A stretch of DNA of 64,000 nucleotides from Schmidtea nova (taxonomy: Eukaryota). Positions 7,251 through 30,361 of the stretch are shown here, in pieces (within the stretch, counting starts at the first letter, position 1; every line of letters begins with the position of its first letter). Location of the stretch: contig CM097882.1 in the NCBI GenBank assembly GCA_044892505.1, forward strand, positions 381,424,001 through 381,488,000, in the 5' to 3' direction. The position numbers and the translations under genes are program-made. A model generated the notes under the pieces. It was not told where the DNA came from. It saw only the letters and a list, made by a program, of their open reading frames with translations, and did not search any database.

Positions 7251-8500
7251 CTGAAAAGAATACTATAATAAAAACAAATTTATTTTTTGCACATTTAGTT
7301 AAAAATAAAAATAAATGATATGACTATCAATCGCGTTATTTATAGAAATATCAAGCAGAATGTAGATGAGTATTTATAATGAAACCATTGCTAAGAGAAC
7401 TTTAGATGGTTCCCCACCATTGTTAACTCTTTCGTTACCCTCATTAACCAATTAAAGCATCATTTTACCACATAGGTTATAAATATATATAAATAAATAC
7501 TTTTACAAGATGGGAAACATTGAAACAAAAAATAATTTCGAAAACTAGAAGGCATGTTACGAATACACAGTTTATCTAATATAATCCTAATGTAAGTGAA
7601 ATGAAATAAAATATTCAAATCCCCATTTGAAGATTGCGATAACGAATGGACTAGTAAAACTAGCTGTACCAGAGGTTCTCAACTGCGGACGAAGTGTTCA
7701 GGGTTTAAACATCAAACCAAAATTAAAAAGATTCTTATAATTAATATACATTAAATATATCATCGACACTAATAATTTTCTAATAAAGCTCTTGTTTGGT
7801 ACTATTTAGAACAGGATTATAATTTGTCTTTAGAAGTATTATTGAATTCCAGAAGCCAAAAAAATTCTTTAAATAATTTATGCGAGTAATATTTTATTCT
7901 TTTTCTAATGGAAAATATTCGGCAAAATCTTAATGAATATCTTTTATCAAGTTTTATAAATAACGCAAAAGACCCAAAATGACCAAAAATGTCACGTGCT
8001 TTCCCCTTTCGCACAAAGCAAATATGCAAAAACATCGGTAGAAAATGAATAACCCCATTTAATATTTTTAACAAAAATATATTGTTCAAAGATAATTTAA
8101 AAAGCGAAGAAAAATTAATGGTGATGGATTGATTGCCTTCTATAAAATTGAGAAATAATTACAACGGTTGGAAGCGCGTATGATAATTGATGTTGTACTA
8201 ACTTAATAAAATAAATTATATTTGATTATACTTAATATTTTTGGAAACTGAGCCACTAATATTTTGATAGTTCATTATCAGTTATTCAGTATTCAGCAAC
8301 ATTCTTTGAGAACAATATCATTTTCATAAAATTTTCGATATTTTATTTTTTATTTTAAGACTAGATTATAATAATTTTTAATTGGTACACGAAATTTTGG
8401 CACTACCTTTATAAAGTATATAAAGAACTTTGATCTAATATTTAAAGAAAATGAAAATATTGAAAACTGAAAAGATCAACGGTTTTTTTTATAAACAATA

Positions 8501-8535
8501 ACACAATATTTCGGCACAGCCTTTATCAAGTGTGT
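8501..8535 (-). ncRNA. Minimal hammerhead variant (U3:A8 core)
   Basis: Reverse strand ACAC-TTGATAA-A-GGC tgt GCC-GAAA-TAT-T-GTGT; stem I extends AATA/TATT past a bulged C. Confidence 0.65.
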
Positions 8536-8694
8536 ATTTCTATCGTTATATTTACTTAATCCTAAATAGTAGCCTTAATTATTTTTTTAATATTTTATAA
8601 TGATTTTATTTTATCATCCAATAAAATCATTATAAAATATTAAAAAAATAATTAAGGCTACTATTTAGGATTAAGTAAATATAACGATAGAAAT

Positions 8695-8729
8695 ACACAC
8701 TTGATAAAGGCTGTGCCTAAATATTGTGT
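8695..8729 (+). ncRNA. Hammerhead variant copy with G12->U (predicted inactive)
   Basis: ACACACTTGATAAAGGCTGTGCC-TAAA-TATTGTGT; GAAA is changed to TAAA at 8718. Confidence 0.55.
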
Positions 8730-8781
8730 TATTGTTTATAAAAAAAAAATTTGATCTATAGTCATGAGAATTATTGATAAT

Positions 8782-9306: not shown

Positions 9307-9510
9307 NNNNNNNNNNNNNNNNNNNNNNNNNNNNNNNNNNNNNNNNNNNNNNNNNNNNNNNNNNNNNNNNNNNNNNNNNNNNNNNNNNNNNNNNNNNNNN
9401 NNNNNNNNNNNNNNNNNNNNNNNNNNNNNNNNNNNNNNNNNNNNNNNNNNNNNNNNNNNNNNNNNNNNNNNNNNNNNNNNNNNNNNNNNNNNNNNNNNNN
9501 NNNNNNNNNN
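9307..9510. other. Assembly gap (N run)
   Basis: Run of n. Confidence 1.
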
Positions 9511-10371: not shown

Positions 10372-10506
10372 NNNNNNNNNNNNNNNNNNNNNNNNNNNNN
10401 NNNNNNNNNNNNNNNNNNNNNNNNNNNNNNNNNNNNNNNNNNNNNNNNNNNNNNNNNNNNNNNNNNNNNNNNNNNNNNNNNNNNNNNNNNNNNNNNNNNN
10501 NNNNNN
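10372..10506. other. Assembly gap (N run)
   Basis: Run of n. Confidence 1.
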
Positions 10507-22431: not shown

Positions 22432-25400
22432 ATGGATTTTAAAGATGATGAAAAATTTGATAATGTATTATTAGATATTATTCAACGGGTAAATACTCTA
22501 CCAAATTTTTTGGACGTATTGTTTGGATTTTTAAGAAGGAGGTTTATATTCAACAGTTATAATTAATATTTCGTGTGGTTTTCTAGAACTGATTTATATT
22601 ACATAATGGATAATAATCAATCAAAAATGGGGTTTTTCCCAGGTAAAGCAGAAAAATTAATTTTAGATGTATTTTTTATAGAATATCATTTATATTTTAA
22701 TTTGTTTTAAGGCTTTTAAGAAACATAAAGACATATACGAGTCTTGTTTACCAAATAATTGTAGGCTTATTAACAATTCATAATGATATTAACAATCGTT
22801 AATTTAAGCAGCATTAAGTGAAGCAAGACAATTAATTCCAAGCAAATCTGAACCCTGTGAAAGAAATGAAAATCAAATTAAAAAAACTTTTAATGATAAT
22901 AGTAAAATATCGGAATCGGAAAACAATGGGTACCAATTAAAAGTGTAGATTTGTAATTTTTTGTAATAGTTTATTCTATGTTGCTGATGCGGAGTCATAC
23001 AACGGGTCGATTGGGGATAATTATACTTGGAGTCAAACAATTGGTGAATTGGATATTCGCGTGAAGGTTTGTATGTTTTTATTTTAAACTCAATCTATAA
23101 TTTGTTATAAATTAATATGTATGTTTTCATTTGATTAAGTTTTTAAATTCTATTAAAATTTTTATATTTGTTTGGAATTATATTAGTAATAATCATAAAG
23201 TATATCATTATATTTAACATCTTATTCTAATACTAAGTATCGAGGGAGAAAATTCTTAATTTGAACGGTACTAAGGAACAACGAGTTTGTGAACAAGATA
23301 TTACTGTAGTGTTGTAAAACTTTTTTAATAAGGCAAAGTAAAACTTAGTTAAAATAACAAAAATGATACTTTCCAAAATAATATAAATGCTACACCTTCT
23401 GTCTGAAAATATTGTATACGTTTCAATTCTTGTTTGACAATCAGCGAAAGAAAGAAACATCCTAATTTTTAGGAATAATTTTTAAATTTTAAATCGAAAT
23501 TTTTTCTCTTAGGTAACATTTTCATTCCAAATACTGCTTTCGAGCGATGTGATAAATTCTATTCACAGTCAAACGACTTAATATATATTTTGCTGTAACC
23601 TTATTAATTGAACCGAGGTCAAATTTTTCTGTTTTATAGTCATAGCAGCTTTTGTAACTACGTCCTCTTTGATTTGAAATTAGAAAATTTCTCTTAAAGT
23701 TTTCATTTTGTCATAATTTCTCCAAAAAATATTGATTTTTTAAAATATTTTGCACTCGTTTTTTTAAAATTATTAAAAATTAACATTTTATTTTACATTA
23801 ATTACATCATTTATTAAAAATTTAAAAACGTGATGATAACGAAATTATTACGCATCTTTTTACTATTAGCTTGTTTAATAGTAAATTGACGGTAGGCTGT
23901 AATGACTTCACGGGCTCTTTATAACAAATTTTTTAAAAAACACTAACAATAGGTCTGATGTGATTTCTGTTGCGCTGTTGGTGAAATATAGAATTAACAA
24001 TTAATTACCTGACTTCGAGTGCTTTTCAATCGACCAACAAATGAATTTGTACCAAACCAATCCCACTAAACGCATAAAAACCCTCTTTGGGTATAGTCCA
24101 GCATTAAGTGTCAGAATCGGCGCTTGTCCGAGGAAAAGCCATTGTTTTTTTCGTTTAATATTTGAATAGAGATCTCACTTTTCATGACCAGTAGCAAAGC
24201 ATTACAAACTGTTCATCGCTGTTCTTTTCGGAAAGATTGTGATGAAACCAAATCCCATGCCTATCCACCTTTTAATTCTCCTTTAAATGTTCCTGTACTG
24301 TTGACTATTATGAGTTTACATTATTCGACAATTACTGTATGTTTTAACGCGGGTCAGACTCAATAGATAGCGTAAGCAAGTCATCATCCAGATTGGGTGA
24401 CCTTCCGGAACGTGAACCACTAGAAAGATAAAAAAACTTTCCAAACCAACGTTGACATCAGTTCACCTTCAATATATCCCAGAGGTTTTCGTAGCCTCGG
24501 TTGTATTCATCCATTAGCAAAGGTAACGAGTCAAATGCCGGTAGGTAACTGCGGGGAAAATATCTATTTGCGGGGTTACTGTTTTTTGATAAGATAAATC
24601 GGTAAACGATGAATTAACAAACATCTACTATGAAAAATCAAATAAAACTAATAATTATTATTATCATAATTATCTTTTTGTTTCACCTTTGATCTTTTTT
24701 TAATTTTAATATCAATAATTCCCACAATGATAAGACTAGATCAAAATTTCTTTAAACAAGTACCCAATATTTCGGCAAAGCCTTTAATACACACTTGATA
24801 AAGTCTGCCTAAATATTGTGTACTTATTTAAAGAAATTTTTATCAATAGTTTTACCATTATGGAAATTATTGATATTATTATTATAATTATCAGCAGCAA
24901 CAATATCAAATTCATTTTCGGTATCCATTAAAAAAATCAAAAACAGCTACAAAATTTATTAAATTTAAAAACTACGCTTTTTCTCCTAATATTTAAACAA
25001 AAACTTGAAGACTATTCTTCTTTAATTCTGATGTTGATTTGAATGCTGGCTAATTTTTTAAATAAGAAATAACATATATTTTAAGGTTAATTTAAATTAT
25101 TAATTTAAGATGTTTAAATAAAAATTTATGAAATCTGACAAATACAATTTAAATGTTTATTAGCAATTTTAATTTAAACGTGAATTNNNNNNNNNNNNNN
25201 NNNNNNNNNNNNNNNNNNNNNNNNNNNNNNNNNNNNNNNNNNNNNNNNNNNNNNNNNNNNNNNNNNNNNNNNNNNNNNNNNNNNNNNNNNNNNNNNNNNN
25301 NNNNNNNNNNNNNNNNNNNNNNNNNNNNNNNNNNNNNNNNNNNNNNNNNNNNNNNNNNNNNNNNNNNNNNNNNNNNNNNNNNNNNNNNNNNNNNNNNNNN

Positions 25401-27220
25401 NNNNNNNNNNNNNNNNNNNNNNNNNNNNNNNNNNNNNNNNNNNNNNNNNNNNNNNNNNNNNNNNNNNNNNNNNNNNNNNNNNNNNNNNNNNNNNNTGATT
25501 ATTTTTACTATTATCATTATTATTAATCATAATCATTAATTCATCCCGACGGGTGAAACGCGGGAAACCCCGCGTTTCATCCGGTACCCTTAGCAAAGCA
25601 AAAACTCTGCAATGTTTGAATGTTTTTTTTATCAACTTCCACGTCGGATCCTTCAATCCGGATTATTTCATATAATTTTGAAAATAATTTGTTTCTTCTC
25701 GTTACACACACACATATATATATGTGTGTGTGTGCTTTAACAGAGATGGCCAAACTTCATGTCACTACGAGCCACATCAAATAATCTCAAAGACAGGAGA
25801 GCCGCGATCACTTTTTCGAACGAATCATAAACAATGATTTTTATCTAAGATTTTTAAACTAAGACCCGATGGTTTTCTTTTTTTATCAATAAATGCTGAA
25901 TCTTTTTCCAAACTACTCTTAAAATTTCTATTTCATTCTTCTTGCTTTTCGAATCCATAATAAAGGATTTTATTTCTATTTACATCAGTTAAGGAGTCTT
26001 TTAACTACAGAAATATCAATTTCAACCAACTTTGACCTTACGTTTTACCTACAGAGAAATTCAACATCTGATTGGCTATCCTACAAAATTGATAATATTG
26101 AAATTATTCATTTATTTTACGGATATGTAATGTCAAATAAGTTTTATCCTCTTTTGAAAATTTAATTAATTTTCAACTGTCGTCACGAATATTGATTTCT
26201 TTATTATTCATATATATATATATATGGAAGTAATCGTTAAATGTATTCGGTTTATTTCAACAATTTTTACTAAATTACCCTTTTTATGTTTCACCGCCAA
26301 AAATACATATCAATAATGAAGCTGACATAGGTTGAAGGATATTTGTGTAGATGGACATTTACTGATGAAATTGTAAGATATAAAGATAACATATGCCATG
26401 TTTTCTGTAAATTCTTAATATACTAATCCCAAAGAATGGACACTAATAATATCATCATTATATTCCGGTTTCCCTTTTGATCTTTTTTTCTTTCAGTAAT
26501 TTTTCTAAGACTAGATCAAAACAATTTTTCTTATTTCGTAAACGATATTTCGGCACAGCCCTTATCAAGTGTGTACATTGATTGAAATTCATAATATTTC
26601 CGTGACACACAAAATTTAAAAAGCAGTGCTATGAAATTAAATGTTTAGTTTACATTTTAATCGACAGTAGAAATATTGAAAAATTTTCGTTAGATTCCTG
26701 AGGCTATATCAAACAGTAAAGATCTCAGAGTGTCAGTTGATAAAAAGCATATTAGTGTCTGTGCTAATATTCAAAACGAGGTTCAATCTGTAATCGATAA
26801 GGATTTAAGCTGGGAAGTCAAGAAGAACGAAGTGTTTTGGTCATATGATCGAAAAGAGAGTAAAATTTTAATATCCGTAGAAAAAGTCCAAGAACGTTGG
26901 TGGGAAGCGCTTTTTATTGGAGAATCTACAATTAATACTCGTAAAATCGACTGCAGTCGCCCAATGTCCGATTTGGATGATGAAGCTCAAGCAAAAATTC
27001 ACAAATTAATGTACGATAATCGCCAGAAACAGTTGGGTTTGCCTACCAGTGATGAGCAGGTTATATCGTTATCTTTTTGTTTTTCTGGTATATTCAGCTT
27101 ATATTGACGATTTAGGGAATGAATAATGCTCTAAAGAAGGCGTGGAATCTCGAAGGCTCTCCTTTCAAAGGAAAAGAATTCGACCTTTCAAATATTGATA
27201 TTGTTGATAAAGGAAATTGA
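22432..27220 (+). CDS. NUDCD3: NudC domain-containing protein 3-like. Exons 22432-22541, 22587-22668, 22712-22760, 22809-22929, 22970-23066, 26694-27059, 27116-27220
   Basis: Phase-consistent GT-AG introns. Motifs FLDVLFGFLRRRTD, MGFFPGKAE, SYNG..GDNYTWSQT, ERWWEALF.GE, LKKAWNLEGSPFKG match the NudC/NudCD3 family. Confidence 0.88.
24440..24590 (+). mobile_element. Unclassified element copy E4 (degenerate 3' region only)
   Basis: GTTCACCTTC and GGTAACTGCGGGGAAAATAT resemble E1 GCTCACCTGC and GGTAACAGCGGGGTGAATAT. Confidence 0.35.
24710..24870. repeat. Degenerate head-to-head palindrome of the Penelope tail with damaged hammerheads (in NudCD3 intron 5)
   Basis: tttaaacaagtacccaatatttcggcaaagccttt followed by aatacacacttgataaagtctgcctaaatattgtgtacttatttaaa. 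Confidence 0.75.
25187..25495. other. Assembly gap (N run)
   Basis: Run of n. Confidence 1.
26542..26574 (-). ncRNA. Hammerhead variant copy (U3:A8, AUC triplet)
   Basis: Reverse strand ACACAC-TTGATAA-G-GGC tgt GCC-GAAA-TAT-C-GT. Confidence 0.5.
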
Positions 27221-27273
27221 TTTTAATAAAATATTTATTTTCCCTTTCTTGATTCTCATTATATATATGTATG

Positions 27274-27305
<32 letters not shown>

Positions 27306-27312
27306 AACAAGT

Positions 27313-27780
27313 ACACAATATTTCGGCACAGCCTTTATCAAGTGTGTATTTCAATCGTTATATTAACTCAATCTTAAATATTATCATTGGATGAAAAAAA
27401 TTTAATTTTCTTTTAACATGATTTTTTTGTGCGAATTGAATGTTGATGGACGGTTTGTATTTTTTGATGTAAAAAGTCTCGGAAGCTAATCTTTGTAATG
27501 AATTTTTGAATCCCTATTGTAGAATCTGGCATTTTGTTTCTTCTATAGATGGAGTTGTTTTATGTACTTTTTCCCAGTGTTCGTAATAATTACTGGTTTT
27601 GTTTTTAGTGTGTTTATTAAGTGTGGTGAGAAAAGTTATATGTGTTTCTCCTATGTAAGTGGCGTGACGCTGCTGGCTGAATTTTTGAGCATTTAAACTA
27701 TTGAAAGTTCTGGCATTATGGAATGTACCAATGTGACAAACTTACCTTTTTTATTAGACTCCCGAATATTAAGTCATCGT
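27313..27780 (-). mobile_element. Penelope-like element 3' remnant: GIY-YIG endonuclease pseudogene plus hammerhead (27313-27347)
   Basis: Translation TYIGETHITFLTTLNKH...SNYYEHW...RLASETFYIKKYKPSINIQ with a stop, followed by an intact U3:A8 hammerhead motif. Confidence 0.85.
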
Positions 27781-29578: not shown

Positions 29579-30250
29579 AAATACACACTTGATAAAGGCT
29601 GTGCCGAAATATTGTGTTATTGTTTAAAAAACATTTTGATCTATAGTCATCATTATGAGAATTATTGATAATAATAATAATAATTATTATTATTGTTATC
29701 ATAATTATCTTTTTTTACCTTTGATCTTTTTTTATTATTATTATCAAAAATTCTCATAATGACTATAGATCAAAAATTTTTTTTTATAAACAATAACACA
29801 ATATTTCGGCACAGCCTTTATCAAGTGTGTATTTCTATCGTTATATTTACTTAATCCTAAATAGTAGCCTTAATTATTTTTTTAATATTTTATAATGATT
29901 TTATTGGATGAAAAAATTTATTTTAATTTTTTTGTGCGAATTGAATGTTGATGGACGGTTTGTATTTTTTTATGTAAAAAGTCTCGGAAGCTAATCTTTG
30001 TAATGAATTTTTGAATCCCTCTTGTAGAATCTGGCATTTTGTTTCTTCTATAGATGGAGTTTTTTTATGTACTTTCTCCCAGTGTTCGTAATAATTACTG
30101 GTTTTGATTTTAGTGTGTTCATTAAGTCGGATGCGAAAAGTTCTATGTGTTTCTCCTATGTAAGTAGCGTCACATTTTTGACAAGAAAGTTTATATACTA
30201 TATTTTTGGAAAAGCAAAAGCATTGGGTTGTGGAACGGCAAAGACATTTA
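29579..30250 (-). mobile_element. Penelope-like element 3' part: GIY-YIG endonuclease (about 29940-30215), tail with hammerhead (29796-29830, -) and inverted tail copy with hammerhead (29583-29617, +)
   Basis: NIVYKLSCQKCDATYIGETHRTFRIRLNEH...SETFYIKKYKPSINIQ is the PLE GIY-YIG signature (VY..C..C...YIGET.R...R..EH). 29579-29690 and 29735-29834 are inverted repeats. Confidence 0.9.
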
Positions 30251-30361
30251 TTATTGTTATTATTATTATTGTTGTTATAATTATTATATTTATTATTGTT
30301 ATTATATTTATATTATTATATTATTATTGTTATTATATTATTATTGTTATTATATTTATTA

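What the first reader, a model, noticed from the sequence alone, without database searches (positions are those of the whole stretch)
29579..29834. Penelope tails carry a minimal hammerhead ribozyme with a U3:A8 core swap and a palindromic AUAU stem III
Seen: the repeat ACAC-UUGAUAA-A-GGC ugu GCC-GAAA-UAU-U-GUGU sits just 3' of both GIY-YIG remnants. It occurs at 8501, 8695, 24765/24789, 26542, 27313, 29583 and 29796. Known: the hammerhead core is C3UGANG8A...GAAA, C3-G8 is a Watson-Crick pair, and PLE hammerheads are often minimal, have a palindromic stem III and cleave as dimers. Here both partners change together (U3:A8), stem II is 3 bp, stem III is the self-complementary AUAU, and the predicted cut follows AUU. 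Inference: a functional variant ribozyme that standard CUGANGA searches would miss.
Basis: partly seen in the sequence, partly recalled or inferred. Interest (0 to 1): 0.8.

Follow-up and report, generated by a model that had tools for sequence, protein, structure and literature searches.

The report
Penelope retrotransposon mini-hammerhead motif, known U3-A8 type
The repeated 33-base motif is real and fits a minimal hammerhead ribozyme carried by a very abundant Penelope-like retrotransposon, but this swapped-core variant was already described in flatworm Penelope elements in 2014 and nothing here shows that it cuts.

Summary
Observation confirmed. The 33-nt motif occurs 7-8 times in the window, against 0.01 expected by chance, and about 65,500 times in this 1.25 Gb genome. 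It belongs to a Penelope-like element (PLE) with an 865-876 aa RT + GIY-YIG ORF and tandem units of about 2.75 kb. The motif lies in the 152-nt spacer between ORFs, 99 nt after the stop and about 37 nt before the next ATG. The flagged interval 29579-29834 is two copies inserted tail-to-tail in an (AAT)n microsatellite.

The hammerhead reading is supported by comparison between families. The same genome holds at least six other min-hammerhead families, about 13,750 canonical C3-G8 copies plus a U3.G8 family. All share the 9/10.1 bulge, G10.1-C11.1, GAAA and a palindromic helix III. Helices I and II differ in sequence but stay complementary, and the base before the cut is U, C or A, never G. No family carries the unpairable C3/A8.

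It is not new. Cervera and De la Pena 2014 reported U3-A8 PLE min-hammerheads in Schistosoma, with the same bulge and dimer model and low activity in vitro. This scan had already noted the motif on other pieces of this genome. Cleavage is untested: the available runs are contigs, and none of 78 genomic copies starts at the predicted cut. Verdict: new member of a known kind, low interest.

The parts
29585..29617 (+). Exact 33-nt min-hammerhead motif: helix I ACAC/GUGU, core UUGAUAA, bulge A, helix II GGC-UGU-GCC, GAAA, palindrome AUAU, U17. The predicted cut lies between 29613 and 29614.
   Evidence: the minimum-free-energy fold of the 33-mer is helix I + helix II, -5.9 kcal/mol
29796..29828 (-). 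Exact 33-nt motif on the - strand. The predicted cut lies between 29800 and 29799.
29579..29683 (+). PLE copy consisting of the pseudo-LTR only, short 3' form. It runs from about 6 nt upstream of helix I, through the motif and the ORF start (ATGAGAATT..), and ends in (AAT)n.
   Evidence: the same locus as L033 aligns to reference positions 1706-1810 of L063; sequence
29684..30312 (-). 5'-truncated PLE copy, long 3' form. It holds the C-terminal GIY-YIG ORF remnant (29926-30312), about 99 nt of spacer, the motif and the ORF-start segment, and ends in the same microsatellite, tail-to-tail with the + copy.
   Evidence: 100% self hit; reference end 1842
27313..27345 (-). Exact motif copy downstream of the second GIY-YIG remnant (27361-27741). 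This copy ends early and abuts (TA)n at 27259-27312.
26540..26572 (-). Diverged motif copy (bulge A>G, U17>C, G1.3>U) in a pseudo-LTR-only insertion.
8473..8757 (.). Head-to-head pair of PLE copies with 138-nt arms, 97% complementary. Motifs lie at 8501-8533(-) and 8697-8729(+); the + copy carries G12>U.
24739..24844 (.). Decayed head-to-head pair from an older subfamily. The - copy is truncated inside the core. The + copy has a helix II deletion and G12>U.

Best explanation
The motif is the minimal type I hammerhead (min-HHR) of a very abundant, recently active canonical Penelope-like retrotransposon. It is the U3-A8 core variant.

Shown here:
- The element has one ORF of 865-876 aa (RT, then a C-terminal GIY-YIG with an internal CxxC) and forms tandem arrays with a period of 2,752-2,769 nt.
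- The motif sits once per unit in the 152-nt spacer between ORFs, 99 nt after the stop and about 37 nt before the next ATG.
- Most of the roughly 65,500 genomic copies are short pieces of about 100-140 nt holding only the pseudo-LTR. They start 0-10 nt upstream of helix I and end at either of two sites about 35-40 nt apart inside the ORF start. They usually lie as head-to-head twins in (TAA)n, (ATT)n or (TA)n microsatellites.
- The window's copies, including 29579-29834, are such insertions.

Inferred: in multimeric or paired transcripts two motifs pair through their AUAU segments to form helix III and cleave slowly after U17 (AUU|G), 41 nt upstream of the ATG. This would separate unit-length RNAs or trim the 5' leader. 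Activity is probably weak and may need a protein. The RNAs that were actually copied into the genome were uncleaved.
For: Abundance and non-randomness.

PLE identity: GIY-YIG remnants; 150 scored hits at 88-100% identity with open frames up to 876 aa and tandem periods of 2,752-2,769 nt; ORF, motif and ATG layout; RVT_1 at 32 bits against a cutoff of 29.6.

Boundaries: 5' ends at reference 1702-1716 and 3' ends at about 1804-1811 and 1841-1849, with a matching depth step in the contig data. The same layout is published for the Anolis PLE, including the two RT start sites and the optional tail of about 35 nt (PMC11167929).

Structure: the minimum-free-energy fold of the 33-mer equals the proposed helices.

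Covariation between families in this genome:
- The canonical-core pattern gives 13,753 hits against 79 for the control.
- Families share the 9/10.1 bulge, G10.1-C11.1 and GAAA + palindrome.
- Helix II differs but is compensated: GAGAAU/GUUCUC, GACAGC/GCUGUC, GAUUGU/ACAAUC, GAUGGU/ACCAUC, GAUUAU/AUAAUC, GGC/GCC.
- Helix I differs but is complementary: ACAC/GUGU, GCAC/GUGC, UUGC/GCAA, YGC/GCG, GGA/UCC, UAC/GUA, GAGA/UCUC.
- The formal helix II count is 100% paired, with 3 of 6 pairs changed on both sides and slid controls at 17-57%.
- H17 is U, C or A, never G.
- For positions 3:8, C-G, U-A and U.G families exist, and no C/A family does.

Precedent for every 'variant' feature: PMC4209133.
Against: - No cleavage evidence. 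The only runs holding the sequence are contigs of unknown library type with Tn5 adapter remnants.
- None of 78 local copies begins at G1.1 (reference position 1741). All keep the whole motif, so the retrotransposed RNA was uncut.
- Helix II is only 3 bp and the helix III palindrome only 4 A-U pairs. These are the weakest in this genome; the other families have 6 bp and 6 nt.
- Published min-HHRs cleave poorly even as dimers, and hammerhead mutants do not affect PLE insertion in vitro.
- Variation within the family carries no information: 48 C3/A8, 53 U3/G8 and 2 C3/G8 copies among 33,797 exact ones.
- Rfam models do not match. They also miss the canonical-core copies, so this is weak evidence.
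Confidence: 0.78

Rival explanations
1. It is a hammerhead-derived relic that no longer cleaves. On this view the motif descends from a PLE hammerhead but is now kept for another RNA-level role in the pseudo-LTR, such as recognition or packaging by the PLE protein or an element at the transcript's 5' end. Alternatively it is simply hitch-hiking in a young, explosively amplified family.
For: It has the shortest helix II (3 bp) and the shortest helix III palindrome (4 nt) of all families here. The family is so young that selection on the motif cannot be read from its copies. All inserted copies derive from uncut RNA. Hammerhead mutants do not change insertion in vitro, and no RNA-seq ends were found at the hammerhead site in Anolis. 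Naiad PLEs thrive without hammerheads (PMC8557442).
Against: All catalytic-core positions are intact and the 3:8 pair is compensated rather than broken. Older, diverged subfamilies sampled without bias still carry U3-A8 and intact helices. The H17 rule is obeyed. The same architecture is maintained in at least six other families with compensatory changes, which argues that the hammerhead fold itself is under selection in this genome's PLEs.
Confidence: 0.3
2. It is a terminal inverted repeat of a DNA transposon, MITE or foldback element. On this view the 256-bp interval is a palindromic DNA element whose arms merely resemble a hammerhead.
For: 29579-29834 and 8473-8757 are long inverted repeats that fold as near-perfect hairpins. 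They give sub-threshold hairpin-type Rfam hits, for example mir-31 at 44.5 bits against a gathering score of 51.
Against: The two palindromes have opposite polarity, one tail-to-tail and one head-to-head. The arms are the pseudo-LTR of an RT + GIY-YIG element and continue into its ORF. Single copies and tandem 2.75-kb arrays are common. Inverted 5'-truncated partners are a published PLE hallmark (PMC8557442).
Confidence: 0.02
3. It is a chance resemblance of an AT-rich repeat to the hammerhead consensus.
For: The core was read with two substitutions and one insertion relative to CUGANGA. Helices I and II are short. Rfam gives no hit.
Against: The motif lies exactly where PLEs carry their hammerheads. 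Sister families in the same genome have canonical cores and covarying helices at the same architecture. The reversed-pattern controls give 0-79 hits against thousands.
Confidence: 0.03

Closest known systems
U3-A8 min-hammerheads of Schistosoma mansoni Cercyon PLEs (Cervera and De la Pena 2014, PMC4209133)
   Same: A type I minimal hammerhead in the PLE pseudo-LTR. It has U3-A8 instead of C3-G8, an unpaired nucleotide between A9 and 10.1, G10.1-C11.1, a short helix I of 4-5 bp and a palindromic 15.2-16.2 with essentially no helix III. Dimeric action is proposed. There are thousands of dispersed, mostly solitary copies, and some pairs lie on opposite strands 100-700 bp apart.
   Different: Helix II here is 3 bp with a UGU loop, against 7-8 bp reported for Schistosoma. 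The copy number is about 50 times higher (about 65,500 against about 1,300). The family is almost uniform rather than highly heterogeneous. The host species is different and was not identified here.
Canonical-core (C3-G8) and U3.G8 PLE min-hammerhead families of the same genome
   Same: The same order of parts: a helix I arm of 3-4 nt, YUGANRA, one bulged nucleotide, a helix II starting G and ending C, GAAA, an A/U palindrome, H17, then the second helix I arm. They show the same head-to-head twins. One of them (helix II GACAGC/GCUGUC) forms tandem arrays with a period of about 2.7 kb.
   Different: They have a 6-bp helix II and a 6-nt palindrome (AUAUAU), or AAUU in the U.G family. Together they are about five times less abundant than this family.
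Hammerhead of the Anolis carolinensis Poseidon PLE, PAc (Frangieh et al. 2024, PMC11167929)
   Same: The hammerhead sits at the ORF start inside the pseudo-LTR. Insertions end about 110-150 nt into the next ORF, at two alternative sites that give the optional tail of about 35 nt. Compensation at the C3:G8 pair matters for cleavage.
   Different: PAc has the canonical C3-G8 and its ORF starts inside the hammerhead. Here the ATG lies 41 nt after the cut site. PAc cleavage was shown in vitro; this one is untested.
Animal non-LTR retrozymes (tandem hammerhead repeats giving circular RNAs)
   Same: These are short, non-autonomous units that carry a hammerhead and derive from PLE pseudo-LTRs. A head-to-tail junction of the 135-nt unit is present in all four runs laid.
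   Different: Here the dominant arrangement is solitary copies or inverted twins, not tandem arrays. No circular RNA evidence is available.

Membership tests
PLE minimal hammerhead (min-HHR, Cervera and De la Pena 2014) | Located in the pseudo-LTR of a Penelope-like element (RT + GIY-YIG) | tested here: met
   The motif lies in the 152-nt spacer between tandem ORFs of 865-876 aa. RVT_1 scores above its cutoff, and the C-terminal GIY..YIG carries a CxxC.
PLE minimal hammerhead (min-HHR, Cervera and De la Pena 2014) | Catalytic boxes CUGANGA and GAAA, with positions 3 and 8 able to pair (C-G, or the published U-A covariation) | tested here: met
   The boxes are UUGAUAA and GAAA. The genome has C-G, U-A and U.G families but no C/A family.
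PLE minimal hammerhead (min-HHR, Cervera and De la Pena 2014) | One unpaired nucleotide between A9 and 10.1, and a G10.1-C11.1 pair | tested here: met
   There is a bulged A followed by GGC..GCC. The same bulge (A, U or G) and G..C closure occur in all other families.
PLE minimal hammerhead (min-HHR, Cervera and De la Pena 2014) | Helix II of 7-8 bp ('larger than usual' in Schistosoma) | tested here: not met
   Helix II is 3 bp with a 3-nt loop here. The sister families in this genome have 6 bp. This is a descriptive trait of the Schistosoma families, not of the general descriptor.
PLE minimal hammerhead (min-HHR, Cervera and De la Pena 2014) | Palindromic 15.x-16.x segment that allows a dimeric helix III | tested here: met
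   The segment is AUAU here, AUAUAU in the canonical families and AAUU in the U.G family.
Hammerhead ribozyme, type I (general) | Helix I formed by the sequences flanking the core, supported by covariation | tested here: met
   ACAC/GUGU is the minimum-free-energy fold. Seven families have different but complementary arms of 3-4 bp. The helix I count was made by direct reading, not with the pair-count tool.
Hammerhead ribozyme, type I (general) | Cleavage-site nucleotide 17 is H (not G), preceded by U16.1 | tested here: met
   The site is AUU| here and AUU|, AUC| or AUA| in the other families. There is no G among the family consensus sequences.
Hammerhead ribozyme, type I (general) | Site-specific self-cleavage | not testable with these tools
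   Only contig-level runs of unknown type were available. The genomic copies give no support: 0 of 78 start at G1.1.
Rfam hammerhead families (covariance models) | Match at or near the gathering score | tested here: not met
   There is no hammerhead hit at the gathering score or at E<=10. The control shows that the same models also miss the canonical-core PLE copies in L011 and L008, so the models do not cover min-HHRs.

The most novel reading that the evidence does not exclude
The most stripped-down hammerhead in this genome (U3-A8 core, 3-bp helix II, 4-nt palindrome) belongs to by far the most prolific PLE lineage: about 65,500 copies against about 13,750 for all canonical-core families together. 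Cleavage at the downstream pseudo-LTR would cut the reverse-transcription start region off the template. An attenuated ribozyme may therefore have been selected because it favours retrotransposition. On this reading the U3-A8 and short-helix state is an adaptive 'dimmer' rather than a neutral variant.
Probability: 0.15. Interest if true: 0.55.

Novelty: new member of a known kind. Interest (0 to 1): 0.22.

Why it matters
The finding documents one more genome in which PLE mini-hammerheads make up a sizeable part of the sequence. That is about 65,500 copies of roughly 100-140 nt, on the order of 0.5-0.7% of the genome by my estimate. It also gives a clean natural set of sister families (C-G, U-A and U.G at positions 3:8, with helix II of 3 or 6 bp) for asking how much catalytic activity a PLE hammerhead needs. 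It does not reveal a new ribozyme class or a new core variant.

Tried and rejected
- Rfam at the gathering score and at E<=10 gave no hammerhead hit. It also misses the canonical-core copies, so this says nothing either way.
- Covariation of 3:8 within the family was tested with exact counts: 33,797 / 48 / 53 / 2. The family is too young and uniform to be informative. The two C-G copies belong to an older diverged subfamily, and one is twinned with a U-A copy, so they cannot be interpreted.
- RNA evidence: the single run search found four runs from one study, all stored as contigs, of unknown type and with Tn5 adapter remnants. They cannot show RNA ends.
- Dimer cofolding of two 45-mers paired the helix II strands between molecules instead of forming helix III. 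It does not help to judge the dimer model.
I split them into two patterns within the limit.
- A formal pair count for helix I was not possible, because family B's longer palindrome shifts its 3' arm in the alignment. Only helix II was counted with the tool.
- Pfam on the isolated GIY-YIG remnants gave no hit, and the ORF has no relatives in the PDB by sequence.
- Literature searches for C3U/G8A activity data found nothing in the held library.
So the position of the canonical hammerheads inside their own elements was inferred only from their tandem period of about 2.7 kb.
- The organism was not identified.
- The MITE/foldback reading and the chance-resemblance reading were rejected, as set out under the rival explanations.

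Full report
**Observation.** The motif is real and far beyond chance. It has 7 matches in the window against 0.01 expected. In the 1.25 Gb assembly it has 65,486 matches at up to 2 mismatches, against 0 for the reversed control, and 33,797 exact 33-mers.

Read in hammerhead register, four window copies are exact: 8501(-), 27313(-), 29585(+) and 29796(-). The copy at 8697(+) has only G12>U. The copy at 26540(-) has three changes. The pair at 24762/24791 is decayed. GIY-YIG remnants lie about 100 nt upstream of the - strand copies at 27313 and 29796.

**What the element is.** With the GIY-YIG remnant as query, the genome returns 150 scored hits at 88-100% identity. Their open frames reach 876 aa, and they form tandem arrays with periods of 2,752-2,769 nt.

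In three fetched arrays each unit has one ORF. RVT_1 lies at residues 383-569 and scores above the Pfam cutoff. The C-terminal GIY..YIG has the internal CxxC that PMC8557442 gives as typical of canonical EN+ PLEs.

The motif lies in the 152-nt spacer, 99 nt after the stop and about 37 nt before the next ATG (MRIIDNNNKK..). So the 'tail' after the motif is the start of the ORF, which makes it a pseudo-LTR.

**Copy boundaries.** Local alignment of 78 copies to the array reference shows 5' ends clustered at reference 1702-1716, which is 0-10 nt upstream of helix I. The 3' ends fall in two clusters, about 1804-1811 and 1841-1849, next to (TAA)n, (ATT)n or (TA)n. The contig depth profile shows the same step.

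This matches the in vitro study of the Anolis PLE. There the hammerhead sits at the ORF start, reverse transcription starts at two adjacent sites about 111-118 bp into the ORF, and that explains the optional tail of 30-40 bp (PMC11167929).

Many short copies are head-to-head twins. An inverted 5'-truncated partner is a known PLE arrangement (PMC8557442).

The flagged interval 29579-29834 is a + copy of the short 3' form and a - copy of the long 3' form, meeting tail-to-tail in (AAT)n. The - copy continues into its GIY-YIG remnant. A single transcript across the interval would fold as a hairpin of about 100 bp (-125.6 kcal/mol, z -25.5), so this locus is not a place where the hammerhead fold would form.

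**Is it a hammerhead?** The minimum-free-energy fold of the 33-mer is exactly helix I (ACAC/GUGU) plus helix II (GGC-UGU-GCC). It is weak, at -5.9 kcal/mol, and with flanks helix I can extend.

Variation within the family carries no information, because the family is young: 48 C3/A8, 53 U3/G8 and 2 C3/G8 copies among 33,797 exact ones.

The useful test is between families. A canonical-core pattern gives 13,753 hits against 79 for the control. The hits fall into families that share the bulged nucleotide after A9, G10.1-C11.1, and GAAA followed by an A/U palindrome.

- Helix II sequences differ but are compensated: GAGAAU/GUUCUC, GACAGC/GCUGUC, GAUUGU/ACAAUC and GAUGGU/ACCAUC.
- A further family has U3.G8, with helix II GAUUAU/AUAAUC and palindrome AAUU. 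It has a few thousand copies, plus U-A and rare C-G derivatives.
- The unpairable C3/A8 pattern returns only decay products of the other families and two unrelated repeats.
- Flank lists and local copies show helix I arms that differ between families but stay complementary: ACAC/GUGU, GCAC/GUGC, UUGC/GCAA, YGC/GCG, GGA/UCC, UAC/GUA and GAGA/UCUC.
- The nucleotide before the cut is U, C or A, never G.

On the three families that I hold with flanks, helix II is 100% paired, with 3 of 6 pairs changed on both sides. The slid controls give 17-57% paired.

One canonical family forms arrays with a period of about 2.7 kb, so it is a sister PLE with a canonical hammerhead once per unit.

Rfam finds none of these motifs, the canonical-core ones included. 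Its silence therefore carries no weight.

**Does it cut?** Unknown. The only runs that hold the sequence are contigs of unknown type with Tn5 adapter remnants, and they cannot show RNA ends.

The genomic record argues that the RNA used for insertion was uncut. All copies keep the whole motif, and none of 78 begins at G1.1. This agrees with the Anolis result that hammerhead mutants do not affect insertion and that no RNA-seq ends map to the site.

This family also has the shortest helix II and the shortest palindrome in the genome. Published min-HHRs cleave poorly and only as dimers or trimers.

**Comparison and novelty.**
- the U3-A8 covariation in S. mansoni Cercyon PLEs, with about 1,300 hits from a U3-A8 descriptor;
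- the conserved G10.1-C11.1 pair;
- the palindromic 15.2-16.2 segment;
- the dimer model and the low activity.

What differs here is the 3-bp helix II, the very high copy number and the uniformity of the family.

Earlier notes of this scan reached the same reading on other pieces of this genome. I treated them as leads and re-derived the points above.

**Verdict.** This is a genuine PLE min-hammerhead motif of the published U3-A8 type. It is a new member of a known kind, its cleavage is unproven, and interest is low.

Noticed in passing
own genome, (pattern TTGANAANGN{8,18}CGAAANNTH): There is a strong strand asymmetry: 10,310 forward against 1,007 reverse hits. The first 50 Mb of C1 gives only about 2 hits per Mb. 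This suggests a large one-strand tandem array (satellite or retrozyme-like) somewhere with a U3-A8-type core.
   Followed up: no
L063:1708-1842 (equivalent to window 29581-29683 plus the long form): All four runs contain a contig junction joining reference 1842 to 1708 with one T between. This is a head-to-tail tandem of the 135-nt short unit, a retrozyme-like arrangement. It is rare relative to total depth.
   Followed up: partly
L031:-:1501 and L032:+:1501 (G000:C2:5263901 and C2:390860858): These are the only two genomic copies of the otherwise exact 33-mer that have the canonical C3-G8. They belong to an older diverged subfamily (ORF start MEII.. rather than MRII..). In L031 the head-to-head partner carries U3-A8.
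   Followed up: partly
G000:C1:4728064-4741588: A tandem array with a period of about 2,698 nt, with one canonical-core min-hammerhead (helix II GACAGC/GCUGUC) per unit. It is presumably a sister PLE family.
   Followed up: no
own genome: Two unrelated dispersed repeats mimic a C3/A8 core without hammerhead helices: CTGATAAAGCAGAGATCGGACGAAAGGTT and CTGAAAATGACCTTAAGCGAAAAATT.
   Followed up: no
L008:1909-1992, L008:1485-1586, L011:1485-1572: Head-to-head twin insertions of the motif give sub-threshold microRNA-precursor hits in Rfam: mir-3688 at 55.7 bits against a gathering score of 84, and mir-31 at 44.5 against 51. Hairpin-based miRNA predictors would probably flag these false positives.
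   Followed up: no
window 8718: In the 283-bp head-to-head palindrome 8473-8757, the + copy's only difference inside the motif is G12>U, a position essential for hammerhead catalysis. This is consistent with neutral decay after insertion.
   Followed up: yes
window 9307-9510, 10372-10506, 25187-25495: Three runs of N (assembly gaps or masking). I left them untouched.
   Followed up: no
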